From IMG/VR virus record IMGVR_UViG_3300043570_001980, positions 277,991 through 341,990 of that record: DNA of 64,000 nt. One strand, given 5' to 3'. The notes under the pieces are model-generated. The model was not told where the DNA came from and searched no databases. It was given only the letters and a program-made list of their open reading frames with translations. Positions 1,315 to 63,802 of the stretch are shown here, in pieces (positions within the stretch are counted from its first letter, which is position 1; each line of letters opens with the position of its first letter). A program made the translations under genes and the position numbers.

Positions 1315-1323
1315 GAGGAACCA

Positions 1324-3102: not shown

Positions 3103-3107
3103 TTGTG

Positions 3108-3113
3108 TAAATA
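3108..3113 (+). promoter_or_regulatory. T4-type late promoter core TAAATA
   Basis: TAAATA 7 nt upstream of ATG 3121, no Shine-Dalgarno. Confidence 0.55.
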
Positions 3114-3120
3114 GTTATAT

Positions 3121-9200: not shown

Positions 9201-9205
9201 AGAAA

Positions 9206-9233
9206 TATTTATCTATGTATATTATGGTAAATA
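9206..9233. promoter_or_regulatory. Back-to-back late promoter cores
   Basis: TATTTA 9206-9211 (minus strand, 5 nt from ATG 9200) and TAAATA 9228-9233 (4 nt from ATG 9238). Confidence 0.6.
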
Positions 9234-9237
9234 TAAT

Positions 9238-9819: not shown

Positions 9820-9826
9820 ATAAAGA

Positions 9827-10465: not shown

Positions 10466-10466
10466 A

Positions 10467-41258: not shown

Positions 41259-41528
41259 ATGATAACAGTATATTCAAAAAATCATTGCCCGTTTTGCGAT
41301 CAAGCAAAAGCACTATTAACAAAATGGGAAATTCCATTTGATGAAGTTAAAATTGACCAAGACACCAGTGCTCGTGAGTTCATTGTCAGTGAAGGACACC
41401 GCACAGTTCCGCAAATTTATAATGGTGACAAATTATTTGTTGATGGTGGCTTTCAAGGTTTAAGTAAGCTTAACGCAGACGAAATTAAAACACGTTTGGG
41501 TATTACTAATAACCTAGGAACATTATGA
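41259..41528 (+). CDS. Glutaredoxin
   Basis: CPFC, RTVPQI, GG motifs. Confidence 0.93.
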   Translation: MITVYSKNHCPFCDQAKALLTKWEIPFDEVKIDQDTSAREFIVSEGHRTVPQIYNGDKLFVDGGFQGLSKLNADEIKTRLGITNNLGTL

Positions 41529-41824
41529 AACCAGAAATTAACGAAACTTATACATTCAAACTTATCACCGGAGAAGAACTAGTTGCAAAAATACTTGAAA
41601 TTCATGCTGATTACATGATTATCAAAGAACCAATTAGTTGCGTACTAAGCCCACAAGGTTTACAAATGATGCCAACTTTGTTTAGTGCAAACAAGGACAA
41701 AGATATGCGACTAAATAATTCTAGTTGGGCAATGATTGCCGAAGCTCGTGAGGATGTTCGTAACAGTTACATTCAGGCTACTACTGGAATTGCGCCAATT
41801 AGCAAGCAAATTATCACAGGCTAA
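41525..41824 (+). CDS. Sm/SH3-like fold phage protein
   Basis: FKLITGEELVAK...Y...TTGI pattern typical of T4-like phages. Confidence 0.6.
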   Translation: MKPEINETYTFKLITGEELVAKILEIHADYMIIKEPISCVLSPQGLQMMPTLFSANKDKDMRLNNSSWAMIAEAREDVRNSYIQATTGIAPISKQIITG

Positions 41825-42039
41825 TGCCTCATTGCTTTAAAATCATGGTTAACGGGAAAGTCGATACCTATCTTAGATACGAAGACATTCCCGAAATTCT
41901 TGATCACGTTATTGAGTTTGACCCGGAGATTCCTCCGCCACCACACAATGACAAAGATCACGATGAAATTGATCTTTGGAAAAGTAGATTTAAAGATCTT
42001 ATGGAGAGAGAACGTGCCAGCAGTAGCAAGAATCGGTGA
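41824..42039 (+). CDS. Hypothetical protein
   Basis: YEDIP..DHVIEF.P..PPPPH motif; TAATG coupling. Confidence 0.6.
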   Translation: MPHCFKIMVNGKVDTYLRYEDIPEILDHVIEFDPEIPPPPHNDKDHDEIDLWKSRFKDLMERERASSSKNR

Positions 42040-42304
42040 TAAATGTGTGGTTGATTGTAGCCCGCCTACTTTAATATCAGGCAGTGGAGATGTAAAAGTA
42101 AACGGCGTTGGCGTTGTGCGCCAAGGAGACAGCACAGACCCACACAAACTTAAAAAGGGCAGATGCCCCATCCACGAATCAAAAGTCACCGGTGGGTCAG
42201 GATCTGTGTTTGTGAACGGTAAACCCATTGCCAGAGTTGGCGACGCCCTTGGTCCAGAATGCACACAAATTAGTCAGGGATCCGGCGATGTATTTGCAGG
42301 ATAA
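42014..42304 (+). CDS. PAAR-repeat baseplate spike tip protein (gp5.4-like)
   Basis: GTG start MPAVARIGD; GSGDVKVNG, GSGSVFVNGKPIARVGD, GSGDVFAG. Confidence 0.9.
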   Translation: MPAVARIGDKCVVDCSPPTLISGSGDVKVNGVGVVRQGDSTDPHKLKKGRCPIHESKVTGGSGSVFVNGKPIARVGDALGPECTQISQGSGDVFAG

Positions 42305-42307
42305 AAA

Positions 42308-44185
42308 ATGGGTCTAAGTCCTACTCAATTGATTGCCAGCGCAGGCCTTACAGAAAATCAAGGCATCACTGTCAGTGGCAATCTAACTTTGAATATTACC
42401 AATTACAACAACGTTGCTGTTGTTAAGCAGTTTATGGGTGTGGTGGCCAATGCCATTGCTGGCAATATTGGCAATGCCACAATAGCAGATCTTCAGACGC
42501 TGGGAGCATCAAACTTTCCTGCTGTTACCAATGCTATTCCATCATCTGCGGCCAATGCATTAGGCAATACCTATACCACTGGGTTCACTGGCTATATCAC
42601 AATGATTGCCAATACAGAAACGGGTAACAGTGATGTCAGCAAGTTCACACAAATTTTTTCTCAGTCACAGGGGTATATTTCACAGGCTAACCAATTCTTA
42701 AAAGCCAACGAAAAATCCAAAACACTTGCAACCACTTTTACCAACATGGATGATCTGACCACTGGTGGATTTTCCAGTGTTAATTCAAATTTGCAAAAGT
42801 TTGGTGAAGATCTGCAAAAGCTTGGCAGCCTGATCAATCTTAAAGACCTTAATAGTCTTGGAAGTCCTGCCGCATTGCTAAAACAGTTTGTAAACGTAGC
42901 AGGACTAACACCTGCTATCCGTGCCATGGCCATTGCTGCCGGTGCCACTGACAGTCAATTAAACAGTATAGCCAAAGTCGAGTTCGCTGAAAATGTAAAC
43001 AAAGCCTTGTACGAAGGCATGACAAAAATCACAGGTGATGCACTATCACAGGTCAACGCTATTATGAAAGTTACCACAAGTAATATTTCAACAATGGCTG
43101 ATTTACTAAATCCTGTCAAAATTTTTCCTACCAGCTTTGGCGGATTTACTGCACCTACTGCCAACGGATTACAAAAAATTTATGTAGACCAGTCAGGCAG
43201 CGTTAATCAACAGTTGGCAACACTACTGCCACAGACATACATTGATCTTTATAACACGTTACAAAAAATTATTCCGCAGGACCAGGCATTGGCCAACAAA
43301 GCACTGGTAGCATCGCTGATGCAGATTAAAGGGATTTTTAATTCCACGCTGGTATCAATGAGCAAAGCAGTTACCAGTCTAGAAACCAACACAGGTCTTG
43401 GAGATATAAATGCTTTAACAACTCCAGTGCCGGCTTCAGTTGGTTCTACATTACAATCACAACTGGGATCAGGAACAGGTCCAGGGAATACTCTTGTATT
43501 AAATGATGTGATTGGCACAGCTGCCGGAGCAGTACAAAATATAGAATTGCCAATTGTGACAGCAACCATGTCAAACCTTGCAACGGCAAATGCATTTTAT
43601 ACTCTGACATTTGACGACGGAAATCCAAATAGTGCTGTCAAACTTGGCGTGTTTACTGTGATGAATTATGTGTTAAACGGCGCCTACAATCAATCTAATC
43701 CAAATCCGTCGCCACCTCCGGCGGAACTGGGAGAAATTATAATACCAGCACCACAGCCTGGTGCAGGAACGTATGGGCCAGCAAACTCTGCTCCAAGTTT
43801 GTATGCTAGTGTTTTTGATGTACTAATCCCAATTGCGGCCAGCGATATTTCAAACATTGCCACAACAAATTCTACCAATGTTGCCATAACAACATCAGCA
43901 TTTGGTAATATGGCAGCTCAGCTGGAAAGAGAAAAAACCAATCAAGCCAAAGCACAGATTGACTTTGCTAACCTACAGCCAAACGCAACATCTTCTGTAC
44001 TGTCGTTTGCATCAAGTCTGGCCTCTTATGGCAAGGATGTAGAGCCCGGTCAGGCCGCAGACTATATCAACAGCGTGGCTGATGTCAGCAACCAAACAGG
44101 ACAGGCAATTATTGCATCCATGCGTGAAGCTAGAAATATCGCCGCTTTAGGTGCTGTCGGTGTCCCCACAGATACCCAATTGTAA
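42308..44185 (+). CDS. Probable baseplate hub/tail structural protein
   Basis: 625 aa, A/N/T/S-rich, directly after PAAR. Confidence 0.55.
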   Translation: MGLSPTQLIASAGLTENQGITVSGNLTLNITNYNNVAVVKQFMGVVANAIAGNIGNATIADLQTLGASNFPAVTNAIPSSAANALGNTYTTGFTGYITMIANTETGNSDVSKFTQIFSQSQGYISQANQFLKANEKSKTLATTFTNMDDLTTGGFSSVNSNLQKFGEDLQKLGSLINLKDLNSLGSPAALLKQFVNVAGLTPAIRAMAIAAGATDSQLNSIAKVEFAENVNKALYEGMTKITGDALSQVNAIMKVTTSNISTMADLLNPVKIFPTSFGGFTAPTANGLQKIYVDQSGSVNQQLATLLPQTYIDLYNTLQKIIPQDQALANKALVASLMQIKGIFNSTLVSMSKAVTSLETNTGLGDINALTTPVPASVGSTLQSQLGSGTGPGNTLVLNDVIGTAAGAVQNIELPIVTATMSNLATANAFYTLTFDDGNPNSAVKLGVFTVMNYVLNGAYNQSNPNPSPPPAELGEIIIPAPQPGAGTYGPANSAPSLYASVFDVLIPIAASDISNIATTNSTNVAITTSAFGNMAAQLEREKTNQAKAQIDFANLQPNATSSVLSFASSLASYGKDVEPGQAADYINSVADVSNQTGQAIIASMREARNIAALGAVGVPTDTQL

Positions 44186-53146: not shown

Positions 53147-53449
53147 ATGGCCGACATTAAAAATAGAATTAAACCAAACGTAAAACTGGCAGAGCCTCCA
53201 ATGTTTAAGGTTATCTATATCAACGACAATCAAACATCTATGGAATTTGTGATTGAAAGTTTAATTCAATATTTCGAATATAACGCAGTTACCGCTGAAA
53301 AAATCACAACAGATATTCATGACGCTGGATCTGCGTGTGTTGCAGTTTTGCCATATGAAATTGCTGAGCAAAAGGGAATTGAAATTACTATTAGTGCTAG
53401 AACCGAAGGGTATCCCTTGCAGATTAAATTAGAACCCGAGACTGCTTAA
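53147..53449 (+). CDS. clpS: Clp protease adaptor ClpS
   Basis: PPMFKVI..ND..T.MEFV...IH..G...EIAE.K...YPL. Confidence 0.9.
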   Translation: MADIKNRIKPNVKLAEPPMFKVIYINDNQTSMEFVIESLIQYFEYNAVTAEKITTDIHDAGSACVAVLPYEIAEQKGIEITISARTEGYPLQIKLEPETA

Positions 53450-54234
53450 AAATTAACTTCAATTCGTAGAGGATGATACACTGACTTTTTCCATTGTGTA
53501 TCGCCTCTTCCTCTACAGTTGTTAACATATCGTATTCCGTCAATCACACGATCAACGCTGCCATGATAATGTCCAAAGCACCAATGGCTAATCTTGTTTT
53601 CCGAATCTTCGTGTAGTATTTGTTGAATAAAACTATTGCCCATGGTATTGTATCTATGTGTTCCAACTAATTCAATGTCATGGCTAATCAAATCTTTAGA
53701 CGGTACTGTATGTGTAACAACAATAATTTTTTTAACATCGCTATGAGTTTGCAGTCTCTTGACAGACGAAGATAGATAATCAACATCATTAAATGCAATA
53801 CTTTCGATGACTTCAGGAACCCAGGACTCACAGTTGAACTTGTCTCTAAATGCTTGTTTGCTTTCAACCGGATCAATGCTGGTGTCAAAGTCCCAGGTCC
53901 ACCAACCATTGGTTGCAATGATTGCCACTCCATCAATTACTACAGCATTGTCTTGAAGATAAATGACATTTGGAAACTCATCTAGGATACCTTGAATTTC
54001 TTTGTAATTGCCCCCAATCTGATTTAGATTTTGTTTATGCTCGTCATTGCCGTCGATATAAAAAACACCCTGGTAACAACCACTAAGATGACTGAGGGAC
54101 TGTGAAAGTAGTTGATAATTTTTTGAAACATCCCCAGCAACAATACAAAACTGGCTGGTGGCTTGGCCTTCCCAATCAAAGTCGGGCCACGTTTCTAAAT
54201 GAAGGTCTGAAATAAGATCAAATGAAAATTGCAT
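53446..54234 (-). CDS. Calcineurin-like metallophosphoesterase
   Basis: SDLH, AGD, GNDE, THT, FGHYH; minus-strand TAAATA 54241-54246. Confidence 0.85.
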   Translation of the reverse strand: MQFSFDLISDLHLETWPDFDWEGQATSQFCIVAGDVSKNYQLLSQSLSHLSGCYQGVFYIDGNDEHKQNLNQIGGNYKEIQGILDEFPNVIYLQDNAVVIDGVAIIATNGWWTWDFDTSIDPVESKQAFRDKFNCESWVPEVIESIAFNDVDYLSSSVKRLQTHSDVKKIIVVTHTVPSKDLISHDIELVGTHRYNTMGNSFIQQILHEDSENKISHWCFGHYHGSVDRVIDGIRYVNNCRGRGDTQWKKSVYHPLRIEVNF

Positions 54235-54260: not shown

Positions 54261-54626
54261 ATGAACATAATTTTAGGTGAAGAAAACATCAAAGAAATTG
54301 ATCAGAAATACACAGTACTTGAATTAGATACATTGTTGTTTTCAGGGGCTACTACCCCGATAACTGCATATTGTCTAGTAGAAAAAGTTGGACTTGAAGA
54401 GTATGTGTCGTTGGATCGTTTTAGAGAATTGCACAATAACATGATGAAAAACTATCGCCTTAAAAACTGGAAGTACTGCGAAGATGCACTCGAACACTTG
54501 ATGGGCAAATGGCGAGGCGAACTCAACAGTTTTTATGACGATATTGCTATACGCATTAAAGAATACAAACAAGCAGATCCAGGAGAACACTGGGCTGGAG
54601 TAATTGAAAAAAAGATTAGCTTTTAA
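54261..54626 (+). CDS. Hypothetical protein resembling the C-terminal tail of class III adenylate cyclases
   Basis: IILGEE..LELD....G...P..Y ... YR..NW ... RI..Y...PG..W.GV...K. Confidence 0.5.
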   Translation: MNIILGEENIKEIDQKYTVLELDTLLFSGATTPITAYCLVEKVGLEEYVSLDRFRELHNNMMKNYRLKNWKYCEDALEHLMGKWRGELNSFYDDIAIRIKEYKQADPGEHWAGVIEKKISF

Positions 54627-55920
54627 TTAGTTTAAAAAACTTAATAATATCAGCCTTGGATTTTTTGGGATTCTCTCTAAACAGATTTTCTTTTATTTCG
54701 GGATTGGTACAGTTAAGTTGGTTAATAAATTTCCAAGTTTGCCCAGTGCAATGCTGATTAGCAATGTCTCTGGCCAATTTATAATTTGTTTTAAATTCGT
54801 TGATTACCTGGTCACTGAATTCTTTACTAAAGAATCTTTGCTGATTGTATTTGATTATAGGAAGAAATTTTTTATTAAGTTCTTCTTTTTCACTTAATGA
54901 TAGCATTGATATTTTTGTCATTAACTGAATTATTGCTTCTAATCGTTGATACGGGTCTGAGATTGAATCATAACTTTCGTCGATGTAATCTCCAAACGTT
55001 TTGAATCCATAACTGCGAAGATAATCAAGGCTTCCGTGTGTGGCTGTTAAAATAAACGGCTTGCCACAGGCAATTGGTCTTAGAGTTTTTTCTGTGATAT
55101 GCAGTCGTTGATCATCAAATAGTGTTTCAAGCACAACATCAAACCAACATTCTTTGTAGTCGTTCGCAGAATAATCTGCACTATAAGTTGATGCCGCAGT
55201 TGGCTCAGGCAACATTGATAAATCATTGTTGGGGATAAATTTTGGGTTTTTGTAAAGATATTGTTGATAATGTTGTTGATCACAGGTAGTAGAAAATTTA
55301 ATATTTGATCTATTAATCAAATTGTTTTCAACAAGTAGGTCTGTAAATTTTACACGATATTCTCTAGAACCAGACCATGCTCGATTATAAATGTTAAAGT
55401 CTTTGTTAAATGTATTTGCGTAAACTAAAGAAGGATCAAGTTCAGCATAACGATACCAGTCTCTAGAAATAATTGCATGACTCCACCAATAAACTCCTAC
55501 CATGTTATTTTCTTGGTACTTTTTTAAATTTTCTGATCTTTGCTCACTGTGACAAATTAGTGTTTTATCATAGATTGAACGACCGTAGCAGACAAAGTTT
55601 AAGTTTTGAGTACTTAAAATATCTTTAGTTTCGGGCACCAATTCCATGGTTTTTGCAGTCAGCTTGTCGTGTTTATTAAACCAAGGTAACATACTGTTTG
55701 TTAAATTATCCTCATTGTAATAGTCAAAATTCAAAGGCTCCTGATCGTGCATGACCATAAGCAAACTGGTATTCCACTCAAACCACGAGCGATCTCTAAT
55801 GGAGAACTGTGAAAGGTCGTCGATTTCTTTACTGCCGTGTGGATAAAAGTGATAAATTAATACATCACAATCAACACAACTTTCAAGGTAGTGATACATT
55901 TTATCAATAGGAATTAACAT
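54616..55920 (-). CDS. Hypothetical GT-B-like protein
   Basis: YNR....R.YR, VVLET, ITEKTLRPIACGKPF, LRSYGFKTF..IDESYD; start uncertain. Confidence 0.6.
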   Translation of the reverse strand: MLIPIDKMYHYLESCVDCDVLIYHFYPHGSKEIDDLSQFSIRDRSWFEWNTSLLMVMHDQEPLNFDYYNEDNLTNSMLPWFNKHDKLTAKTMELVPETKDILSTQNLNFVCYGRSIYDKTLICHSEQRSENLKKYQENNMVGVYWWSHAIISRDWYRYAELDPSLVYANTFNKDFNIYNRAWSGSREYRVKFTDLLVENNLINRSNIKFSTTCDQQHYQQYLYKNPKFIPNNDLSMLPEPTAASTYSADYSANDYKECWFDVVLETLFDDQRLHITEKTLRPIACGKPFILTATHGSLDYLRSYGFKTFGDYIDESYDSISDPYQRLEAIIQLMTKISMLSLSEKEELNKKFLPIIKYNQQRFFSKEFSDQVINEFKTNYKLARDIANQHCTGQTWKFINQLNCTNPEIKENLFRENPKKSKADIIKFFKLIKS

Positions 55921-57157
55921 GTCAAATAATATTGGGTTTATTGGCCTAGGCAAACTAGGTTTGGATTGCGCAGAAGTCTTTGCTGAAAAATATACTGTAC
56001 GTGGTTATGATATTTACCCACGAGAAAGCGAGCTGGTTAAAGTTTGTGACATTGAAGAAGTAGTCAGCAAAAGTGACTGGATTTTCATTGCTGTTCCAAC
56101 CCCGCACACTGAAGGATATGACGGAAGTGTACCATCTAGTCATATGGAGCCAAAAGACTTTGGGCATGATGCAGTTAAAGATGCATTGGTTAAAGTAAAC
56201 AAATTTGCTACTACGCCAAAACGAGTGGTGTTAATTTCCACAGTACTTCCAGGAACCACACGTAGACATTTTGCCACGTTGTTAGATAACAAACACCAGT
56301 TTTTATACAACCCTTATTTGATTGCCATGGGAAGTGTAAAATGGGATATGGCTAATCCTGAAATGGTTATGATTGGTACAGAAACAGGCGATGCCGGCGA
56401 AATGCGAGATCTAATAGATATCTATCGCCCATTGATGAAAAACAATCCACGTTATGTAACTGGCACCTGGGACGAATGCGAAGCCATCAAAATCTTCTAT
56501 AATACATTCATCAGCGCCAAGGTAGGATTGGTCAACATGATTCAAGACTTTGCACTAAAGATTGGTAACATCAATGTTGACGTAGTAACTGATGCACTGG
56601 CACAGTCGAATATGCGTATTATGGGGCCCAAGTACATGACAGCTGGTATGGGTGATGCAGGAGCATGCCACCCACGTGACAACATTGCCTTGCGCTGGCT
56701 GGCTGAAGAGTACAACATTGGATATGACTTGTTTGATACAATCATGCATGCGCGAGAAGTCCAGGCAAAAAATCTAGCACTATTTCTTGTTGATATTGCT
56801 GAAAAGAAAAATTTACCAATTGTCATTCATGGCAAAGCATACAAGCCTGATGTTCCTTATTGCATTGGTAGCTACAGCACTTTAATTGGGCACTACATCA
56901 AAGAAGCAGGCCGTACCGTTAAATATCTAGATCCATTAGCAGATGACAGCAATGATGTGATTGCATATGTCAAAGGCCCTGTGGTATTATTAATGGCACA
57001 CAATCGACAAATTACCTATGGATACACCGGAGATGTACGAGACGATACATTCTATACTCCCATTGAAGCCGGCAGTATTATTGTAGATCCATGGCGCAAA
57101 ATGGCTAATATGACCGGTTACAAAATCATCCACTATGGCAACACACGACAGTCGTAA
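55919..57157 (+). CDS. UDP-glucose/GDP-mannose dehydrogenase family protein
   Basis: GFIGLGKLG, AVPTP, STVLPGT, K..YN.F, GACHPRD, AYKP. Confidence 0.9.
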   Translation: MSNNIGFIGLGKLGLDCAEVFAEKYTVRGYDIYPRESELVKVCDIEEVVSKSDWIFIAVPTPHTEGYDGSVPSSHMEPKDFGHDAVKDALVKVNKFATTPKRVVLISTVLPGTTRRHFATLLDNKHQFLYNPYLIAMGSVKWDMANPEMVMIGTETGDAGEMRDLIDIYRPLMKNNPRYVTGTWDECEAIKIFYNTFISAKVGLVNMIQDFALKIGNINVDVVTDALAQSNMRIMGPKYMTAGMGDAGACHPRDNIALRWLAEEYNIGYDLFDTIMHAREVQAKNLALFLVDIAEKKNLPIVIHGKAYKPDVPYCIGSYSTLIGHYIKEAGRTVKYLDPLADDSNDVIAYVKGPVVLLMAHNRQITYGYTGDVRDDTFYTPIEAGSIIVDPWRKMANMTGYKIIHYGNTRQS

Positions 57158-57653
57158 GTACAACATTGATGTATTTTGGGATGATGAGTACAAACGCCTT
57201 GACTACATCAACGAACCATTTAATGATCCGGTGAGTGTTAACTCTTGGATCACGCAAGGATATCAAAGCAAAATCACCGGCGACCTCTGCGACATGCGAC
57301 ATCAATTGCCGTCCTGGAATCAGAAGTTCATTGATCTATTTGAATCTCAGGGATGGAAAGATATTGGTACCGCTTATTACAGAATGCCTACGGGAACAGT
57401 AATGCCCACACACAGTGATCTTTACGTTAGGTATATTGATATTTTTAAATTAAAAGGCCAAGAGAACAACATAAGACGAGCCATTGTTCTAGTAGAAGAT
57501 TGGAAGTCTGGACATTACCTTGAAGTGTTAGGAAACCCTGTGGTTAATTGGCAAGCCGGAACCGTGGTTGAATGGACATATAATACTCCACACATGGCAG
57601 CCAACATTGGACCTGAACCACGGTACACACTTCAAATTACTGGACATATATGA
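57135..57653 (+). CDS. Cupin/2OG-Fe(II)-like (Asp/Asn hydroxylase-like) protein
   Basis: PTHSD...PHMAAN.G..PRYTLQITG. Confidence 0.6.
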   Translation: MATHDSRKYNIDVFWDDEYKRLDYINEPFNDPVSVNSWITQGYQSKITGDLCDMRHQLPSWNQKFIDLFESQGWKDIGTAYYRMPTGTVMPTHSDLYVRYIDIFKLKGQENNIRRAIVLVEDWKSGHYLEVLGNPVVNWQAGTVVEWTYNTPHMAANIGPEPRYTLQITGHI

Positions 57654-58567
57654 TTTATAGCCAAAACGAATGGGATAAACTTAAAACTTGCGTAGTTGGA
57701 TCTGCCACAGATGCAAACTGGCCTGTGTATGATCCTGTGTTTAAATTGGAAAGTGAAAAGACCTCATGGAAGGAAACTCCTGTTCCACGTGGTCCTGTAC
57801 CCCAACAAATTATTGACGAAGCCAATGAAGACTTAGATAAGTTGGCAACAACCCTAATCAGTTTGGGTGTGGACGTTGTACGTCCGGAGCCACTTAACTT
57901 TCAAACTCATGACGGAATGTACAATTATTGCCCACGTGACAGATTACTAGTTTACAAAGATACTATTATAGATCCTGCTATGATGTACCCGTGTCGGAAC
58001 ATGGAGTTACAATGCTACCATGACATTGTTGATTTGGCACCGAATTATCTACACATGCCCAGGAATGAAAATATGATTTTAGATGCGGCTAATCTACTGC
58101 GCCTAAACGATAAAATGCTATTTTTAGAGTCGCCATCTGGCAATCGTGCCGCATATGATTGGCTACAGCAACAGTTTCCTGATGTAGAAATTGAAATTTG
58201 TAATTTTTATAGTGGTGTGCATATTGACTCCACTATTACACCATTGCGTGAAGGCCTTGTACTGCTAAATGGTAGCAGGGTTAATTCAGCAAATTGCCCT
58301 AAAATTTTTGAAAAATGGGATAAAATTTATATAGATGAAGTTATTGCTCAAGACTTCTATAATTACCCGTATGCAAGTAAGTGGATTGCCTTAAATATGT
58401 TAGTGGTTGACCCAACAACAGTGATTGTTGACCAAAAGCAAACAGAGTTGATACGCATACTAGAGCAACAGAGTTTTACAGTAGTTCCGTTAGAATTACG
58501 ACATAGTAGAACATTAGGCGGCGGTTTTCACTGTGTGACATTAGATTTATGGAGAGAACATGCTTGA
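57650..58567 (+). CDS. Amidinotransferase (glycine/inosamine-phosphate amidinotransferase family)
   Basis: NEWD.L..VVG, CPRD, DAAN, HIDS, RTLGGGFHCVTLD. Confidence 0.9.
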   Translation: MIYSQNEWDKLKTCVVGSATDANWPVYDPVFKLESEKTSWKETPVPRGPVPQQIIDEANEDLDKLATTLISLGVDVVRPEPLNFQTHDGMYNYCPRDRLLVYKDTIIDPAMMYPCRNMELQCYHDIVDLAPNYLHMPRNENMILDAANLLRLNDKMLFLESPSGNRAAYDWLQQQFPDVEIEICNFYSGVHIDSTITPLREGLVLLNGSRVNSANCPKIFEKWDKIYIDEVIAQDFYNYPYASKWIALNMLVVDPTTVIVDQKQTELIRILEQQSFTVVPLELRHSRTLGGGFHCVTLDLWREHA

Positions 58568-59837
58568 CACCAAATCGGTAACAGAATTAGTAGAACAACA
58601 GATAGCAAAAGCAGTTGCTGAACAAGTTGCTGCCGTTATGAATAACGGCAAATGGCTTAGTGCCATTGAAGGACAAATTACAAAACATGTACAGGATAGG
58701 ATTACTGCAAAATTTAGTAATATATCAACAGTTCCTGATTTGGTATCCACTGTACAAAATAGTGTTACTAAATTATTTGAACAAGGGCATGTGCCTGGAT
58801 TAGATTTATATGTAGATGCTAATAAAATCTCAATGGCAGTTGATAACTCTGTGCAGACTTTTGTTGAGTCCACAATTGACAATCTAGTAGTCGATTCTAC
58901 TTGGTTAAACAAAATTGAAAATACTATTCACAAGCAAATGTCACTAAAACTTTTGCAAAAGATCAGCGGAATAGATCTAAACAAAATGTTAGTCAACGAA
59001 ATTGATAACGGTATTACTCGTTGGCAAGATCGACTAATTACCAATTTTAAAACTTCGGGCATTATTGATCAATCAACCAAATTGGAATTAATTGTCACTG
59101 ACGATACTGTGATAGTAGAAAATAATCTTATTTCTAAAAATGCCATTGTTGATGACACATTAACAGTACAAAATCTTGTTGTTAAAGGACAAATCAATAC
59201 GGATAACAATTCGTGGAATGAACTTGCTACAAAAATTGCGTCGCTCACACTAGAATTATCCAATGACGAATGGAAAAATCAGTTAGTTAATCAAGTATTG
59301 GATATTGCCAAGGCTGGAGGAATTGACTTCAGTGAAGTTACACTAAATGGAAAACCTCTTATTGCACACAATGGTATCAACCCAACTATCATTGAATCAA
59401 ATTTACAAAAAGTTGGAACACTAAGAGAACTTGATGTTTCGGGGAAGGCCAGAATTTTTGACACACTTGCAGTTGCCAACAAGCGTGTGGGTATCAATAC
59501 CGATCAACCAGAGATGGCTCTGAGTGTCTGGGATGAAGAAGTATCGTTGTTGTCGGGTAAGATTTCTAAAAATCAAGCGTATTTCGGAACAGGCCGAAAA
59601 CAAGGATTGTCAATTGGTATTAATAGACAGTCCAGTATTGACATAGATCCCGAAGGCCTAACCACTGTCAAAAAAATTAGAATTGACAAACATCGTATTG
59701 CATTTGAACCTGCAGTTCCTGGATACAGCGGCTCACGCGGAGACATTGTGTTTAACAGCGACCCAAAGCCCAACACACCGTTTGCTTGGGTATGTATCGG
59801 TGCATTCCGCTGGCAATCACTAAAGGCTGGTGAATGA
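58560..59837 (+). CDS. Hypothetical protein with a tail-fiber-like C-terminus
   Basis: RVGINTDQP, GDIVFNSDP...WVC...W motifs. Confidence 0.55.
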   Translation: MLDTKSVTELVEQQIAKAVAEQVAAVMNNGKWLSAIEGQITKHVQDRITAKFSNISTVPDLVSTVQNSVTKLFEQGHVPGLDLYVDANKISMAVDNSVQTFVESTIDNLVVDSTWLNKIENTIHKQMSLKLLQKISGIDLNKMLVNEIDNGITRWQDRLITNFKTSGIIDQSTKLELIVTDDTVIVENNLISKNAIVDDTLTVQNLVVKGQINTDNNSWNELATKIASLTLELSNDEWKNQLVNQVLDIAKAGGIDFSEVTLNGKPLIAHNGINPTIIESNLQKVGTLRELDVSGKARIFDTLAVANKRVGINTDQPEMALSVWDEEVSLLSGKISKNQAYFGTGRKQGLSIGINRQSSIDIDPEGLTTVKKIRIDKHRIAFEPAVPGYSGSRGDIVFNSDPKPNTPFAWVCIGAFRWQSLKAGE

Positions 59838-60388
59838 AAATAAATTGGGTGTTTGCCGAGGGCTATCAAATTGATCCAACAGTCAACCTTGATTCTATTA
59901 AAAGCATAGGCCCAACCTGGGGTTCCTGGAAGACCTGGCGTGGATGCTCTACTGATAATGTTATATGTCACAATAAGTCCAAAGCGCAGGAATTAATTCA
60001 ACGTGCGTTTCAAGCTGTGTGTAATTTTTATGTGTCTAAAGATCATTACCAGTCTATAGGGAGACCAATGGGTGTCAAACTCTACGAAGGCGAGTTCACA
60101 CAGGAAGTAGACTGTCCAGACGATATCGTAGCATTGCACTTGGTTAGTAATATTTCGGACATTGTATTATTGGCTGGTTTTGATTTATCCAAAAAAGAAA
60201 AAGCTCTGGACCGATTTCAAGAACATAAAGACTTTAATTATTATGCTCTAATTCAAAGTATTATTACAGCTAACCCAGACACACAGTGGGTTTTGGTTGA
60301 TCACCCAAATTCTGTTGACAAATCTTTTAAAAAATTATCCAATCTCACTTGCGATATAATGCCAAATGTGTTAAAATTACTAGTGTAA
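59834..60388 (+). CDS. Hypothetical protein (possible GT/MptE-like Rossmann fold)
   Basis: ALHL...IVLLAGFDL motif; ATGA coupling. Confidence 0.55.
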   Translation: MKINWVFAEGYQIDPTVNLDSIKSIGPTWGSWKTWRGCSTDNVICHNKSKAQELIQRAFQAVCNFYVSKDHYQSIGRPMGVKLYEGEFTQEVDCPDDIVALHLVSNISDIVLLAGFDLSKKEKALDRFQEHKDFNYYALIQSIITANPDTQWVLVDHPNSVDKSFKKLSNLTCDIMPNVLKLLV

Positions 60389-60410
60389 ACAAACTCACTG
60401 GGATTTTATT

Positions 60411-60602
60411 TTGAATTCACTTGAACGTATCTGGGCCAGAGCCACCGGACATCTAATGGGGCAGACAGATGAAGATCGACCAGATATTCCTATTCTTTCT
60501 TTGCGTGAAGCCAGAATTGCATTGACTTTAAAAACGTTTTGGGTTATAATACATGTAATCACCTGTTTCTTTATTTGTATCAACGTTGTTCATCATTGGT
60601 AG
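60411..60602 (+). CDS. Small membrane protein
   Basis: TTG start; IWARATG..MG..D..D; C-terminal TM helix. Confidence 0.55.
   Translation: MNSLERIWARATGHLMGQTDEDRPDIPILSLREARIALTLKTFWVIIHVITCFFICINVVHHW
60522..60550 (+). promoter_or_regulatory. Sigma70 promoter for uvsE
   Basis: TTGACT-17-TATAAT inside the upstream ORF. Confidence 0.65.
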
Positions 60603-60610
60603 GAGCCACT

Positions 60611-61630
60611 ATGGGAAGAATTGGATTTTGTTGCAAATGGCTTAATGACCCCACAGAATGTGGCGGTATGAAAGTCAACGCAAAGGACCGGGACCTAAAC
60701 GGCAGATCAACTACCATGCGCTGGCTCCGCGAACACAAGGACGAAGCAGAGCAACGTCAATGGGATATCATGAATCACAATGCCTCGGCGGCTGTGAAGA
60801 TGATCGAACGTGTGGCCACCTTGCCCGCAGAACGCAGAATGGTACGTCTTGGTAGCGAAATGCTACAGGGCTACACTGAACCTTCATGGATTGCGTGGTG
60901 GCAACGGCCGGAAATTCAGGATCATTGTGAGAAGATCTTTGCCCCAATTGGTGAAGCCGCACGTAAATACGGTGTGCGTTTGAGCTTTCATCCTGGACAA
61001 TTTTGCGTACTAGCAAGTGAAGCAGATGAGATTGTAGAACGTTCAATCCTGGAATTTGAATATCACGCTGATATGGCACGTTGGATGGGCTATGGCAAAA
61101 CCTGGCACGACAATGGTTTTAAGATCAACGTACACTTGAGCGGTAAAGGTGGTGCCGCAAAATTCTTGCGTACTCTAGGTAGACTCAGCCCAGAAGCAAG
61201 AAACTTAATTACTATCGAGAATGATGAGATGACAAATGGACTTGACACTACTTTGGCTGTGGCTCAGCATGTGGCTCTTGTATTGGACCTACACCACCAC
61301 TGGATTAACTCGGGAGAGTACATCTCCGCGCAGGACGATCGTGTCAAGCGGGTTATTGACTCTTGGCGCGGCACTCGTCCTGCACTTCATTATAGTGTTA
61401 GTCGCGAGGACCTTTTGGTTGACCATGACCGAGGAACTAGACCCGATCTTGCTGAACTTCTTGCTAGAGGTTATAAAAAACAGAAACTCCGGGCACACAG
61501 TGACTTCTATTGGAATCACGCTGTGACTGACTGGGCCTTGACCTTTGCTGACAACTTTGATATCCAATGCGAGGCCAAGGGCAAGAACCTGGCTAGTGAA
61601 CAAGTTTATGAAAGACATGTAAATGTATAG
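60611..61630 (+). CDS. uvsE: UV-damage endonuclease UvsE (UVDE)
   Basis: RIGFCC, RLSFHPGQF, IENDE, LDLHHH, HYS, RAHSD, CEAKGK; SD AGGAG. Confidence 0.92.
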   Translation: MGRIGFCCKWLNDPTECGGMKVNAKDRDLNGRSTTMRWLREHKDEAEQRQWDIMNHNASAAVKMIERVATLPAERRMVRLGSEMLQGYTEPSWIAWWQRPEIQDHCEKIFAPIGEAARKYGVRLSFHPGQFCVLASEADEIVERSILEFEYHADMARWMGYGKTWHDNGFKINVHLSGKGGAAKFLRTLGRLSPEARNLITIENDEMTNGLDTTLAVAQHVALVLDLHHHWINSGEYISAQDDRVKRVIDSWRGTRPALHYSVSREDLLVDHDRGTRPDLAELLARGYKKQKLRAHSDFYWNHAVTDWALTFADNFDIQCEAKGKNLASEQVYERHVNV

Positions 61631-62762
61631 TGTGTACCAACACTGGGATCCGTTAAAAGTTTGTGTAGTAGGTCGTAGCTATCCACCTGAATTCTATAAC
61701 TGGATCAAAGTTCCGCATGTGCGTAGACTGTTTGAGCGTATTGCTATTGAAACAGAAGAAGACCTGCAAAAAATTGCAACAGTATTAGAAACCTTTGGTG
61801 TTGAAGTATTAAGACCAGAAATTCCTGCAGAGTGGTTTAATCAAACAAGAACTCCTTTTACACCTCCTCCCCTTCAACCTAGAGATATTATGGTTATGAT
61901 TGGAGAAACGTTTTATAGACCAACCAACCAATGGGAAGAATTTTACAAAACAATTAAAGATCCAAGTTGGCCAAGAAATTCTGTAGACATCACTGATCTA
62001 CCAAGTCATGTACAGCAGGAATGCTTGGATGTGCATAATTGGCTTGATGCAAGTAAAGAAGAAGTGTTCCGTCATCACTACCCTTATAAAAAAATATTTG
62101 ATCGTATTCAATCACAGGGCAATATAATAAAGACTAGTCCTCATCCCTGTGTGCAAGGGATGATGACATCACGTATCGGCAAAGATTTATACTTTGCCAC
62201 AGAGTCGTACACTGACGACCAGAATAAAATCAAACAAGTAGTAACACAAGAATTTCCAAATAATCGCACACATATTATCAACACTGGTGGTCACGGCGAT
62301 GCTGTTTACTGTCCGGTTACTCCTGGACTAATTATCAGTTTAAAAGATGTACCAACTTATGCAGAAACTTTTCCAGGCTGGGAAGTTGTTTATCTCCCTG
62401 GACAGAGTTGGGATCACATTAAACCATTCAAGGATTTAAAAGCCAAAAACAACGGTAAATGGTGGATACCTGGATTCGAATACGATCAGAATGTAATTGA
62501 TGTTGTAGAAACTTGGCTTGGTCATTGGACTGGGTATGTTGAGGAAACAGTATTTGATGTCAACATGCTGATCATTGACCCAAAGAACGTAATTGTGTTT
62601 AACTACAATGACCGAGTGTTTGAAGCACTAAGTAGGTATGGAATCACTCCACATGTTATCAATTTCAGACACAGATACTTCTGGGACGGTGGCATCCATT
62701 GCGTGACACTTGATCTACACAGAGAAGGGGTAATGCAAGACTTCTTTCCAAATAAAAAATGA
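61623..62762 (+). CDS. Second amidinotransferase-family protein
   Basis: HWDPL..CVVG, QPRD, GHGD, FDVN, RYFWDGGIHCVTLD. Confidence 0.85.
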   Translation: MYSVYQHWDPLKVCVVGRSYPPEFYNWIKVPHVRRLFERIAIETEEDLQKIATVLETFGVEVLRPEIPAEWFNQTRTPFTPPPLQPRDIMVMIGETFYRPTNQWEEFYKTIKDPSWPRNSVDITDLPSHVQQECLDVHNWLDASKEEVFRHHYPYKKIFDRIQSQGNIIKTSPHPCVQGMMTSRIGKDLYFATESYTDDQNKIKQVVTQEFPNNRTHIINTGGHGDAVYCPVTPGLIISLKDVPTYAETFPGWEVVYLPGQSWDHIKPFKDLKAKNNGKWWIPGFEYDQNVIDVVETWLGHWTGYVEETVFDVNMLIIDPKNVIVFNYNDRVFEALSRYGITPHVINFRHRYFWDGGIHCVTLDLHREGVMQDFFPNKK

Positions 62763-63046: not shown

Positions 63047-63100
63047 GCCCTTGCAGTAATAGTGCTATATGTGGCACTATTTTTGTTAGCTATATACTAT

Positions 63101-63802
63101 ATGATAGAACTAATATACACACTGATAGTGACACATATTACCATAGTATGTGTCACTTTATTTTTACATCGCGGACAAGCCCATCGGGGAATAGAATTCA
63201 ATCCAATACTTGAACACTTCATGCGAGCATGGCTATGGCTCACAACTGGCATGGTCACCAAGCAATGGGTAGCCATACATCGCAAACATCACAGATTCAG
63301 TGATCAGCCCGGTGACCCGCACACGCCACATGTTTACGGAATTTGGCGTGTGTTGTTCAAGGGTGCAGGACTTTATCACTCAGCCAGCAAAAACGCTGAA
63401 ATGGTAGCTCAGTACGGAGTAGGTACTCCTAATGACTGGATGGAACAAAATGTCTACACCAAGCATAGCCGAGCTGGTATTGTGCTTATGCTACTAATAG
63501 ATTTGTTGATATTTGGCCTGCCAGGTTTACTAGTTTGGGGCATTCAAATGATTTGGATTCCATTCTGGGCCGCTGGAGTCATCAATGGTCTAGGTCACTG
63601 GTGGGGATATAGAAATGGCGAAACTAAAGATCACAGTAGAAACATTGTTCCTTGGGATATTGTTGTTGGTGGGGAATGCCTGCATAATAACCATCATTTG
63701 GATCCTGCTAACCCTAGACTGAGTCGTCGCTGGTTTGAGTTTGATGCAGGATGGATGTGGCTGAGCGTGTTTAGACTGGTAGGCCTAGCACGTTTAAGGT
63801 AA
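63101..63802 (+). CDS. Membrane fatty-acid (delta-9, DesA-like) desaturase
   Basis: His boxes HRGQAH, HRKHH, HNNHH; NGLGHWWGYRN. Confidence 0.93.
   Translation: MIELIYTLIVTHITIVCVTLFLHRGQAHRGIEFNPILEHFMRAWLWLTTGMVTKQWVAIHRKHHRFSDQPGDPHTPHVYGIWRVLFKGAGLYHSASKNAEMVAQYGVGTPNDWMEQNVYTKHSRAGIVLMLLIDLLIFGLPGLLVWGIQMIWIPFWAAGVINGLGHWWGYRNGETKDHSRNIVPWDIVVGGECLHNNHHLDPANPRLSRRWFEFDAGWMWLSVFRLVGLARLR

What the first reader, a model, noticed from the sequence alone, without database searches (positions are those of the whole stretch)
54616..62762. Two amidinotransferases with an NDP-sugar dehydrogenase and an oxygenase: an unknown guanidino-modification pathway
Seen: a coupled operon of dehydrogenase, HxD..H oxygenase, amidinotransferase, fiber-like protein and Rossmann protein; a divergent GT-B-like gene; and a second divergent amidinotransferase. 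Both amidinotransferases retain the catalytic His and the GG.HC Cys. Known: this family transfers the amidino group of Arg to amines (glycine in creatine synthesis; inosamine phosphates by StrB1 in streptomycin synthesis) and differs from the ArcS/Gat-QueC enzymes that make dG+ in phage DNA. Inference: the phage makes guanidinylated sugars or a small metabolite, perhaps decorating the co-encoded fiber-like protein.
Basis: partly seen in the sequence, partly recalled or inferred. Interest (0 to 1): 0.66.

Follow-up and report, generated by a model that had tools for sequence, protein, structure and literature searches.

The report
Phage amidino-sugar gene module
A 342-kb T4-like lake phage carries a conserved four-gene set (sugar dehydrogenase, iron oxygenase, arginine amidinotransferase, glycosyltransferase) that most likely builds a sugar carrying a guanidino group, a chemistry not yet described for any virus. 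The second "amidinotransferase" belongs to a different, phage-specific subfamily and is not part of that set.

Summary

**AT1 (57650-58567)** is a StrB1-type amidinotransferase (PDB 1bwd, E 6e-62). All seven catalytic and arginine-binding residues are invariant in 124 distinct orthologues.

**Its neighbours:**
- upstream, a small 2OG/Fe(II) oxygenase (fold match; invariant HxD..H..R);
- upstream of that, a divergent NDP-sugar 6-dehydrogenase with its catalytic Cys;
- a divergently transcribed GT-B glycosyltransferase.

**Co-occurrence.** These four families travel together in 80 contigs of this lineage. The dehydrogenase, oxygenase and amidinotransferase also recur, in other gene orders and inside glycosyltransferase clusters, in a second phage lineage (the S-SCSM2R type); one locus there holds all four. 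A GT-B/dehydrogenase fusion protein also exists. A guanidino-sugar pathway is therefore the best reading, but its product and target are unknown.

**Not part of the core:** the fibre-like protein, the 184-aa protein and AT2 are variable add-ons.

**AT2** keeps the Cys, the His and both guanidino-binding Asp. It lacks the triad Asp and the carboxylate-binding Arg. It is one of five such paralogues in this genome, and its S-SCSM2R relative was found in the virion proteome.

No entry point for any known DNA hypermodification was found.

The parts
54616..55953 (-). p445: GT-B-fold glycosyltransferase, divergently transcribed from the operon. The true start is probably Met12 at 55920.
   Evidence: There is no Pfam, PHROG, NCBIfam or PDB sequence hit. 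The AF2 model has pLDDT 79. VIA-align gives Z 12.0 to T4 beta-glucosyltransferase, followed by other GT-B enzymes (GT10 fucosyltransferases, POGLUT, T4 AGT at Z 9.1). Foldseek against PDB returns only GT-B folds, at E >= 3e-3. BFVD shows many uncultured-phage relatives and a 788-aa fusion with a UDPG/GDP-Man dehydrogenase. It is present in 69 of 80 related loci. The genome holds six paralogues.
55919..57157 (+). DH: divergent NDP-sugar 6-dehydrogenase (UDP-Glc/GDP-Man dehydrogenase family). GxGxxG starts at residue 9; Lys191, Asn195 and catalytic Cys250 (codon 56666-56668) are present.
   Evidence: PF00984 scores E 9e-15 and PF03721 E 5e-13, both above cut-off. The C-terminal domain and TIGR03026 score below cut-off. 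phrog_9148 scores 1.5e-85. The alignment to PDB UGDH 4a7p (E 1.5e-18) keeps the Cys motif. It is present in 80 of 80 related loci. Homologues at 53-56% identity lie beside AT1-type genes in lineage B.
57135..57653 (+). cup172: small 2-oxoglutarate/Fe(II) oxygenase (double-stranded beta-helix). Facial triad His93, Asp95, His153; 2OG-binding Arg163.
   Evidence: The AF2 model has pLDDT 82.5. Foldseek finds 184 PDB matches at E <= 1e-3; the top 50 are almost all 2OG dioxygenases (AsqJ, P4H, AspH, PolD), plus a few small cupins. The four residues are invariant in 11 orthologues of 43-69% identity. PF05118 matches weakly and is carried by 19% of the nearest Atlas cluster. It is 30% identical to S-SCSM2R ORF308, which also precedes an AT1-type gene. 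It is present in 78 of 80 loci.
57650..58567 (+). AT1: StrB1-type L-arginine amidinotransferase. Asp97, Asp145, His191, Asp193, Arg210 and nucleophile Cys295 (codon 58532-58534).
   Evidence: phmmer against PDB gives StrB1 1bwd at 5.9e-62, then HsvA, AGAT and SxtG. All seven key residues are invariant in 124 distinct orthologues from two lineages. More than 7,600 metagenomic relatives were found.
58560..59837 (+). fib425: variable add-on. Helix-rich N-terminal half and a C-terminal part with an 'RVGINT..P..AL' fibre-stalk-like motif. Function unproven.
   Evidence: It is present in only 18 of 80 related loci. The profile search against PDB gives only a weak match to the MYRF stalk/ICA region (E 0.16). 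Single members hit tail-fibre PHROGs marginally (E 0.016 and 0.057).
59834..60388 (+). p184: variable add-on of unknown fold.
   Evidence: It is present in 20 of 80 loci. The only hit is a sub-threshold match to a glycosyltransferase domain (NF046086, E 0.0096). hhalign against the p445 family found nothing.
60539..61630 (+). The likely start is the ATG at 60611, after a sigma70-like promoter at 60522-60550.
   Evidence: PF03851 scores E 2.9e-31 and phrog_8420 2.4e-71. The promoter scan matches 11 of 12 positions.
61623..62762 (+). AT2: member of a phage-specific amidinotransferase-fold subfamily. It keeps Asp88, His224, Asp226 and Cys360. Gln178 replaces the triad Asp and Val243 replaces the carboxylate-binding Arg.
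   Evidence: AGAT matches at 2.4e-18, or 7.9e-27 with the family profile. Residue census over 126 sequences. It is adjacent to the AT1 module in 8 of 80 loci. Four paralogues lie elsewhere in the genome. The S-SCSM2R relative ORF266 was detected in the virion proteome (PMC12801897).
53446..54626 (.). Conserved left-flank neighbours: a metallophosphoesterase (53446-54234, minus strand) and a 121-aa ORF (54261-54626, plus strand). Whether they belong to the module is open.
   Evidence: phrog_1649 scores 1.8e-29. They are present in 62 and 68 of 80 related loci. A metallophosphoesterase paralogue lies two genes upstream of another AT2-type gene.

Best explanation
The conserved unit is p445 (GT-B glycosyltransferase), read divergently from DH, cup172 and AT1. 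It is a sugar-tailoring module of aquatic T4-like phages.

**Proposed steps (inferred)**
1. DH oxidises C6 of a nucleotide-activated hexose or hexosamine to the uronic acid.
2. cup172 hydroxylates or oxidises the sugar, or a related intermediate, using 2-oxoglutarate and Fe(II).
3. AT1 takes the amidino group of L-arginine onto Cys295, releasing ornithine. It then passes the group to a primary amine of an amino sugar or aminocyclitol phosphate, making a guanidino sugar. The amine is probably installed by DegT-family enzymes. These are encoded elsewhere in this genome and directly beside AT1-type genes in the S-SCSM2R lineage.
4. The GT-B enzyme then transfers the tailored sugar to a glycan or protein acceptor, on the virion or the host envelope.

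**What is shown and what is inferred.** The enzyme families, their intact catalytic residues and their co-localisation across two lineages are shown. The order of steps, the substrate, the product and the target are inferred.

**AT2.** It is not part of this unit. It is one of five paralogues of a phage-specific subfamily that keeps the guanidino-binding and nucleophile residues but has lost the residues that hold free arginine. Its relative is virion-associated. It probably acts on a different guanidino or amine substrate, possibly one bound to protein.
For: **Enzyme identities**
- AT1: StrB1 at E 6e-62, with only transferases among the PDB hits. D97, D145, H191, D193, R210, H294 and C295 are invariant in 124 orthologues.
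- DH: family domains and catalytic Cys.
- cup172: 2OG-oxygenase fold and invariant HxD..H..R.
- p445: GT-B fold, Z 12.0.

**Lineage A (80 IMG/VR loci, AT1 60-100% identical)**
- DH 80 of 80, cup172 78 of 80, p445 69 of 80.
- The same order is seen on 107-kb and 697-kb contigs.

**Lineage B (79 scored loci found with S-SCSM2R ORF309; AT about 36-38% identical to ours)**
- The AT lies in clusters with a short DegT-family gene (73 of 79), two unnamed GT families annotated as glycosyltransferases in S-SCSM2R (70 and 61 of 79), a cupin (68 of 79) and a radical SAM gene (23 of 79).
- In 10 of 79 loci a DH homologue (53-56% identical to ours) follows the AT directly; in one more (L179) it lies two genes upstream on the opposite strand.
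- L179 holds DH(-), short DegT, AT, a cup172-like gene and a p445-like gene, in a different order.

**Further links**
- A 788-aa phage protein fuses a p445-like GT-B to a UDPG/GDP-Man dehydrogenase.
- In this genome another AT-fold gene (genome 158238-159299) directly follows two p445 paralogues and lies near a full-length DegT aminotransferase.
- A cup172 paralogue follows a short DegT, a B12-radical SAM gene, an epimerase/dehydratase and a GT1.

**AT2**
- Residue census; six AT-fold genes in the genome; two paralogues lie next to baseplate and portal genes; the S-SCSM2R relative is in the virion proteome.
Against: - No substrate, product or target is known for any of these proteins.
- The conserved four-gene unit itself has no aminotransferase.
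- AT1's closest solved relative acts on a cyclitol phosphate, not a nucleotide sugar.
- DH scores below the NCBIfam subfamily cut-off, and its nucleotide-binding C-terminal domain is weak, so its substrate may not be an NDP-sugar.
- cup172 has no role I can name in any known amino-sugar pathway.
- Lineages A and B are both aquatic T4-like phages, so the module may have moved between them as a block; they are not fully independent witnesses.
- The p445-like match in L179 covers only 119 residues at 30% identity.
- There is no expression evidence: the RNA library holds only contigs of 90-95% relatives, which could be DNA carry-over.
Confidence: 0.55

Rival explanations
1. The module makes a soluble small molecule rather than a glycan building block. 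Candidates are an aminocyclitol or aminoglycoside-like compound, or a simple guanidino metabolite (guanidinoacetate, homoarginine, amidino-polyamine). Such a compound would act on competitors or on host physiology.
For: AT1's best solved relative is StrB1 of streptomycin synthesis. Other family members make guanidinoacetate or amidino-polyamines; AGAT and HsvA are among the hits. The authors of S-SCSM2R filed ORF305, ORF306 and ORF309 as 'antibiotic synthesis genes'. This genome is rich in secondary-metabolite-type enzymes: two Trp halogenases, an AMP-binding enzyme and a carbamoyltransferase.
Against: In both lineages the gene is embedded among glycosyltransferases; up to six lie in a row in lineage B. 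There is a GT-B/DH fusion. No inositol dehydrogenase or cyclase was seen in the module. Aminoglycosides are themselves glycosides, so this rival partly overlaps the main reading.
Confidence: 0.15
2. The module hypermodifies phage DNA. The GT-B enzyme would glycosylate a modified base as T4 beta- and alpha-glucosyltransferases do, and the sugar or base would be further amidinated.
For: The best structural match of p445 is T4 beta-glucosyltransferase (Z 12.0), and T4 alpha-glucosyltransferase is also in the top ten. The phage is T4-like: it has a gp20-type portal and a T4 baseplate protein.
Against: The genome (95% complete) has none of the following:
- a ThyA-fold hydroxymethylase;
- TGT/DpdA;
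- a C5-cytosine methyltransferase that could feed a TET-like route.

It has an ordinary ThyX. The fold match has rmsd 4.5 A and 12% identity, and protein O-glycosyltransferases and fucosyltransferases score nearly as well. The genome has seven p445-family genes (p445 plus six paralogues), which fits glycan building better than one DNA mark.
Confidence: 0.07
3. One or both amidinotransferase-fold proteins are not transferases. They would be hydrolases (deiminase or DDAH-like) or non-catalytic virion components. This applies mainly to AT2 and its paralogues.
For: The AT2 family lacks the triad Asp (mostly Asn; also Gln, Pro, Ser, Thr, Cys) and the Arg that binds the substrate carboxylate; both are invariant in AT1 and in solved amidinotransferases. 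The S-SCSM2R relative is in the virion proteome. Two paralogues lie next to baseplate and portal genes. JGI pipelines label some members 'dimethylarginine dimethylaminohydrolase'.
Against: For AT1, every catalytic and binding residue is invariant, and only transferases are retrieved from the PDB. DDAH scores 22.6 bits against a cut-off of 300. For AT2, the Cys, the His and both guanidino-binding Asp are invariant in 126 sequences, which argues for catalysis of some kind. The nearest solved proteins are again transferases only.
Confidence: 0.15
4. The genes are neighbours only by inherited synteny and have unrelated jobs.
For: In lineage A the whole neighbourhood is conserved, including a phosphoesterase, UvdE and a 95-aa ORF, so adjacency there says little. 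Nearly all genes in this phage overlap their neighbours.
Against: The same families recur in another order in lineage B, where the surrounding genes are different. There is also a GT-B/DH fusion.
Confidence: 0.08

Closest known systems
StrB1, L-arginine:inosamine-phosphate amidinotransferase of Streptomyces griseus (PDB 1bwd)
   Same: It aligns with AT1 over almost the whole length at E 6e-62. The Cys-His-Asp triad, both guanidino-binding Asp and the carboxylate-binding Arg are the same.
   Different: AT1 is about 40 residues shorter; StrB1 residues 139-172 have no counterpart. It is phage-encoded. It sits with a sugar dehydrogenase, a 2OG oxygenase and glycosyltransferases, not with inositol-pathway genes. 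Its acceptor is unknown.
L-arginine:glycine amidinotransferase (AGAT/GATM, PDB 1jdw) and its relatives SxtG and HsvA
   Same: AGAT is the best solved match of AT2 and its family (E 8e-27 with the profile). The equivalents of D170, H303, D305 and C407 are invariant.
   Different: The AT2 family has Asn, Gln or other residues at D254 and Val, Ile, Met, Pro or Gly at R322. It has a conserved insertion of about 45 residues before the last module. It occurs in five copies per genome, and a relative is virion-associated.
Glycan gene clusters of T4-like cyanophages, as in Synechococcus phage S-SCSM2R (ORF301-310; PMC12801897)
   Same: The cupin/AT1-type gene pair is the same (30% and 38% identity), and it lies in a cluster of sugar-modifying genes.
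   Different: In S-SCSM2R the pair lies among five annotated glycosyltransferases, a short DegT and a radical SAM gene, with no DH. In the window it lies with DH and a GT-B of another family. The published annotation calls these 'antibiotic synthesis genes' and reports no test.
2,3-diamino-uronic acid pathway of the Pseudomonas O-antigen (WbpA dehydrogenase, WbpE DegT-type aminotransferase, WbpG amidotransferase); recalled from my own knowledge, not tested here
   Same: The logic is similar: an NDP-sugar 6-dehydrogenase plus a DegT-type aminotransferase gives an amino-uronic acid, which then receives an amidine-type group.
   Different: There the amidine is an acetamidino group made by an asparagine-synthetase-like amidotransferase. 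It is not a guanidino group made by a pentein-fold arginine amidinotransferase.
T4 DNA beta-glucosyltransferase (PDB 1c3j)
   Same: It is the best structural match of p445 (Z 12.0, 277 residues aligned).
   Different: Identity is 12% and rmsd 4.5 A. The genome lacks any hydroxymethylase to provide a DNA acceptor.

Membership tests
Arginine amidinotransferases (AGAT/StrB1 family, pentein fold): AT1 | Full-length similarity to solved amidinotransferases, and closer to them than to the hydrolases of the superfamily | tested here: met
   StrB1 5.9e-62, HsvA 4e-28, AGAT 1e-27, SxtG 7e-25. No ADI, DDAH or PAD chain appears at E <= 1.
Arginine amidinotransferases: AT1 | Cys nucleophile, His and Asp triad (AGAT C407, H303, D254) | tested here: met
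   C295, H191 and D145 are invariant in 124 orthologues.
Arginine amidinotransferases: AT1 | Two Asp that hold the guanidinium and an Arg that holds the alpha-carboxylate (AGAT D170, D305, R322) | tested here: met
   D97, D193 and R210 are invariant.
Arginine amidinotransferases: AT1 and AT2 | Arginine-dependent ornithine release with transfer to an amine acceptor | not testable with these tools
   This needs an enzyme assay.
Arginine amidinotransferases: AT2 and its four paralogues | Cys, His and the two guanidinium-binding Asp | tested here: met
   C360, H224, D88 and D226 are invariant in 126 sequences.
Arginine amidinotransferases: AT2 and its four paralogues | Triad Asp (AGAT D254) | tested here: not met
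   AT2 has Gln178. Of the 120 database homologues of AT2, 93 have N, 10 P, 7 S, 4 T, and only 1 has D. The paralogues have P, N, C or V.
Arginine amidinotransferases: AT2 and its four paralogues | Arg that binds the alpha-carboxylate of arginine/ornithine (AGAT R322) | tested here: not met
   The position holds V, I, M, P or G, and never Arg.
UDP-glucose/GDP-mannose dehydrogenase family: DH | N-terminal NAD domain, central domain and catalytic Cys with Lys/Asn | tested here: met
   PF03721 and PF00984 score above cut-off. Cys250, Lys191 and Asn195 align to UGDH 4a7p.
UDP-glucose/GDP-mannose dehydrogenase family: DH | C-terminal nucleotide-sugar binding domain and subfamily score | tested here: inconclusive
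   PF03720 scores 19.2 bits against a cut-off of 30. TIGR03026 scores 132.8 against 189.8.
2-oxoglutarate/Fe(II) oxygenases: cup172 | Double-stranded beta-helix fold with an HxD...H iron triad and an Arg for the 2OG carboxylate | tested here: met
   Foldseek probability 1.00 to AsqJ, P4H, AspH and PolD. H93, D95, H153 and R163 are invariant. No Pfam model scores above cut-off.
GT-B glycosyltransferases: p445 | Two Rossmann-like domains in the GT-B arrangement | tested here: met
   23 representative chains reach Z >= 8; all but one of those listed are GT-B enzymes (the exception is a fusion construct of a receptor), and the best is 12.0. No sequence family is assigned.
T4-type DNA glucosyltransferases: p445 | A hydroxymethylated base in the phage DNA as acceptor (dCMP/dUMP hydroxymethylase, or methylase plus TET) | tested here: not met
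   No PF00303 and no PF00145 match in the 95%-complete genome.
7-deazaguanine DNA modification (DpdA with ArcS/Gat-QueC) | A DpdA/TGT-family transglycosylase | tested here: not met
   No PF01702 match.
Phage tail fibre: fib425 | Similarity to known fibre or spike proteins | tested here: inconclusive
   There is only a stalk-motif match to MYRF (E 0.16) and marginal tail-fibre PHROG hits in single orthologues.

The most novel reading that the evidence does not exclude
Aquatic T4-like phages make a guanidino (N-amidino) uronic sugar, a cationic or zwitterionic sugar not described in any viral or bacterial glycan, and place it on virion or host-surface glycans. Separately, they package a phage-only branch of the amidinotransferase fold, present in five copies here, that amidinates or otherwise edits guanidino/amine groups on proteins.
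Probability: 0.3. Interest if true: 0.8.

Novelty: new variant of a known kind. Interest (0 to 1): 0.6.

Why it matters
**Reach.** Amidinotransferases are known from creatine synthesis, toxins and aminoglycosides. No viral one has a known role.

**Abundance.** AT1-type genes have more than 7,600 relatives in metagenomes, and AT2-type genes more than 4,400. An abundant piece of aquatic phage biochemistry is therefore unexplained.

**Possible consequences.** A guanidino sugar on a virion or on an infected cell would change surface charge, and with it adsorption, superinfection exclusion or grazing. It would also draw on arginine, which matters in nitrogen-poor waters.

**A testable system exists.** S-SCSM2R carries both gene types and can be grown.

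**New sequence class.** The AT2 subfamily defines a new class within a well-studied enzyme fold.

Tried and rejected
**Searches that found nothing**
- Megablast of the region against 50,697 phage records gave no match.
- Pfam, PHROGs and NCBIfam gave nothing usable for p445, cup172, fib425 or p184.
- Profile searches of cup172 and p445 against PDB sequences found nothing; folding was needed.
- hhalign of the p184 family against the p445 family showed no relation.

**Candidates dropped**
- A possible seventh paralogue (genome 65649-66494) is a GDSL-type protein.
- The cup172 relatives in bacterial 'genomes' are phage contigs binned into MAGs (Legionella, Haliscomenobacter, Bacteroidetes), plus one phage-like 335-kb contig. 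They are not cellular homologues.
- In 401 sampled genomes of the phylum of one such MAG, only one weak AT1 relative appeared beyond that MAG.

**DNA-modification entry points.** ThyA-fold, TGT and C5-methylase families are all absent; ThyX is present.

**Host clues.** psbA and psbD are not found, so the phage is probably not a cyanophage.

**Read laying.** Only contigs came back, so they show neither transcription nor its absence.

**Not used**
- The big protein search was not used: the word search and family scans left AT1 and AT2 identified.
- Complex prediction was not used: I make no claim of binding.
- Only genetic code 11 was used.

Full report
**Setting.** The window is the last 64 kb of a 341,990-bp IMG/VR virus record, 95% complete by CheckV. 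The record has a T4-type portal (PF07230, E 2e-102) and a T4 baseplate protein. It has no psbA or psbD. Its DNA is found in many lake-water metagenomes. Close relatives of the region lie on contigs of 107 to 697 kb. It is a freshwater T4-like jumbo phage of unknown host.

**What is at 54616-62762.**

| Coordinates | Strand | Length | Name used here | Identity |
|---|---|---|---|---|
| 54616-55953 | - | 445 aa | p445 | GT-B glycosyltransferase |
| 55919-57157 | + | 412 aa | DH | NDP-sugar 6-dehydrogenase |
| 57135-57653 | + | 172 aa | cup172 | 2OG/Fe(II) oxygenase |
| 57650-58567 | + | 305 aa | AT1 | StrB1-type amidinotransferase |
| 58560-59837 | + | 425 aa | fib425 | unproven, fibre-like |
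| 59834-60388 | + | 184 aa | p184 | unknown |
| 61623-62762 | + | 379 aa | AT2 | amidinotransferase-fold subfamily |

A sigma70-like promoter (11 of 12 positions) lies at 60522-60550, just before UvdE. UvdE, AT2 and a 95-aa ORF therefore look like a separate transcription unit.

**Identities**

- **DH.** It matches the N-terminal and central domains of the UDP-Glc/GDP-Man dehydrogenase family above cut-off. It also matches phrog_9148 at 1.5e-85. Its alignment to UGDH 4a7p keeps the catalytic Cys (Cys250) and the Lys/Asn pair. It is divergent: the C-terminal domain and TIGR03026 score below cut-off.
- **cup172.** No family scores above cut-off. The AlphaFold model (pLDDT 82.5) matches 2OG/Fe(II) dioxygenases with probability 1.00. 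H93, D95, H153 and R163 are invariant among orthologues down to 43% identity.
- **p445.** It has no sequence-level relatives of known function. Its model (pLDDT 79) is a GT-B fold. The best match is T4 beta-glucosyltransferase (Z 12.0), followed by fucosyltransferases, protein O-glucosyltransferases and T4 alpha-glucosyltransferase.
- **AT1.** It matches StrB1 at 5.9e-62, and after it only other amidinotransferases. The seven residues that make the triad and hold arginine in AGAT and StrB1 are D97, D145, H191, D193, R210, H294 and C295. All seven are invariant in 124 distinct orthologues.
- **AT2.** It also falls among the amidinotransferases (AGAT 2.4e-18; 7.9e-27 with a family profile). It keeps D88, H224, D226 and C360. 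The position of AGAT D254 holds Gln here; among the 120 database homologues it is mostly Asn, and only one has Asp. The position of AGAT R322 is never Arg.

**Is the grouping more than chance?**

- **Lineage A.** In 80 IMG/VR loci with AT1 at 60-100% identity, DH is present in 80, cup172 in 78 and p445 in 69. The shortfall in p445 is partly due to contig ends. By contrast fib425 is present in 18, p184 in 20 and AT2 in 8. Because the whole neighbourhood is syntenic in that lineage, this alone is weak evidence.
- **Lineage B, the stronger test.** Eighty loci were found with the AT1-type protein of Synechococcus phage S-SCSM2R (36-38% identical to ours); 79 of them could be scored. There the AT lies among:
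  - a short DegT-family gene (73 of 79);
  - two glycosyltransferase families (70 and 61 of 79);
  - a cupin homologous to cup172 (68 of 79);
  - a radical SAM gene (23 of 79).

  In 10 loci a DH 53-56% identical to ours follows the AT directly; in L179 it lies two genes upstream on the opposite strand.
- **Locus L179.** It holds DH on the minus strand, then short DegT, AT, a cup172-like gene and a p445-like gene on the plus strand. That is all four families of the window in another order.
- **Fusion protein.** A 788-aa protein of an uncultured phage fuses a p445-like GT-B to a dehydrogenase of this family.
- **Same themes inside this genome.**
  - Two p445 paralogues directly precede another AT-fold gene, near a full-length DegT aminotransferase.
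  - A cup172 paralogue follows a short DegT, a B12-radical SAM gene, an epimerase/dehydratase and a GT1.
  - The first 12 kb of the window is yet another sugar island: GDP-mannose 4,6-dehydratase, an FkbM methyltransferase, GT8, GT17 and a ManC-like gene.

I conclude that p445, DH, cup172 and AT1 form a functional sugar-tailoring unit. fib425, p184 and AT2 are lineage-specific additions.

**Mechanism.**

- *Shown:* the four enzyme classes, their intact catalytic residues, and their co-localisation.
- *From established knowledge of the families:* AT1 should form a Cys-amidino intermediate from arginine, release ornithine and pass the amidino group to a primary amine. DH should carry out a four-electron oxidation of a primary alcohol to an acid. 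cup172 should hydroxylate or oxidise a C-H bond.
- *Inferred:* the acceptor is an amino sugar or aminocyclitol phosphate. DegT-family enzymes make the amine. The GT-B enzyme then installs the guanidino-uronic sugar on a glycan or protein.

I put 0.55 on this. The target (virion, host envelope or a soluble glycoside) is open.

**Rivals**

- **A soluble metabolite or aminoglycoside-like product (0.15).** This fits the StrB1 kinship and the published label 'antibiotic synthesis genes'. It fits the constant company of glycosyltransferases less well.
- **DNA hypermodification (0.07).** The T4 glucosyltransferase fold match suggests it. The genome, however, has no ThyA-fold hydroxymethylase, no TGT/DpdA and no C5-methylase, and it has an ordinary ThyX.
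- **Hydrolase or non-catalytic roles (0.15).** This is unlikely for AT1 but remains open for AT2.
- **Synteny without function (0.08).** The reordered lineage-B clusters and the fusion protein argue against it.

**The AT2 family.** The genome holds six amidinotransferase-fold genes: AT1, AT2 and four AT2-type paralogues at genome 41474-42559, 158238-159299, 215174-216145 and 216585-217814.

- Two paralogues lie beside baseplate and portal genes.
- One lies before large LamG/Ig-domain proteins.
- In S-SCSM2R the AT2-type ORF266, and a 2OG oxygenase three genes downstream (ORF269), were detected in purified virions (PMC12801897).
- The family keeps the nucleophile and the guanidinium clamp, but has lost the Asp of the triad and the Arg that holds a free amino acid's carboxylate.

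It therefore fails two defining features of characterised amidinotransferases, and I do not file it as one. It may act on a substrate without a free alpha-carboxylate, perhaps one bound to protein. That is speculation.

**Novelty.** The library holds one paper that annotates such genes in a phage, without any test. An older paper notes a 'glycine amidinotransferase' among radical SAM genes in Campylobacter phages (PMC2853527). The enzyme families are known. The module, its viral setting and the AT2 subfamily are not described. I rate it a new variant of a known kind, with interest 0.6.

**Limits**

- No substrate is known.
- fib425, p184 and AT2 were not folded; the two structure jobs went to p445 and cup172.
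- Reads gave only contigs, so there is no expression evidence.
- The two phage lineages are not fully independent.
- The big protein search was not used.
- No alternative genetic code was used.
- The read-laying run was kept under 6,000 letters.

Noticed in passing
whole genome G000 (outside the window): 41474-42559 (+), 158238-159299 (+), 215174-216145 (-), 216585-217814 (-): Four more AT2-type amidinotransferase-fold genes, which makes six in one phage genome. Two flank a 147-aa ORF right next to T4 baseplate and portal genes. The most divergent one has Ser instead of His before the catalytic Cys.
   Followed up: partly
window 60539-61630: UvdE UV-damage endonuclease between the operon and AT2. 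It is conserved downstream of AT1 in 60 of 80 related loci. Its real start is probably the ATG at 60611, after a strong sigma70-like promoter at 60522-60550.
   Followed up: partly
window 550-11258: A separate sugar island. It holds SAM methyltransferases, a GDP-mannose 4,6-dehydratase, an FkbM methyltransferase, GT8, a cytidylyltransferase/mannose-6-P-isomerase-type cupin, two Methyltransf_24 genes and GT17.
   Followed up: no
genome 150774-167208 (locus L011): A secondary-metabolite-like cluster next to an AT2-type gene. It holds a radical SAM gene, a DegT aminotransferase, two p445-family GT-B genes, two tryptophan halogenases, an AMP-binding enzyme and a carbamoyltransferase.
   Followed up: partly
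window 63062-63802: A fatty acid desaturase gene (PF00487, E 1e-14), also present in about a quarter of related loci.
   Followed up: no
L014 (JGI contig of 697,313 bp), L015, L016: The same module lies on a 697-kb contig that also carries ClpX, ClpP, ClpS, HSP20 and a DNA ligase. A related 107-kb contig has ribosomal protein S21. The lineage may therefore include megaphage-sized genomes.
   Followed up: no
L100-L103, G001: Phage contigs carrying the module are binned into MAGs labelled Legionella, Haliscomenobacter and Bacteroidetes. One MAG holds two different copies (76% and 66% identical to AT1). This is either mis-binning or a host hint.
   Followed up: partly
window 55919-55953: The listed TTG start of p445 overlaps the DH start by 35 nt on the opposite strand. 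The ESM Atlas record and the orthologue alignment suggest Met12 (55920) as the start, which leaves no intergenic space for a divergent promoter.
   Followed up: partly
genome 39833-40678 and window 53446-54234: Metallophosphoesterase paralogues lie a few genes upstream of both an AT2-type gene and the AT1 module. A phosphatase step would fit a phosphorylated acceptor as in StrB1, but this is untested.
   Followed up: no
genome 107330-108013 (L184:9330-10013): A GTP cyclohydrolase I gene follows the short-DegT/cupin pair. No TGT/DpdA was found, so a 7-deazaguanine route is not indicated.
   Followed up: no
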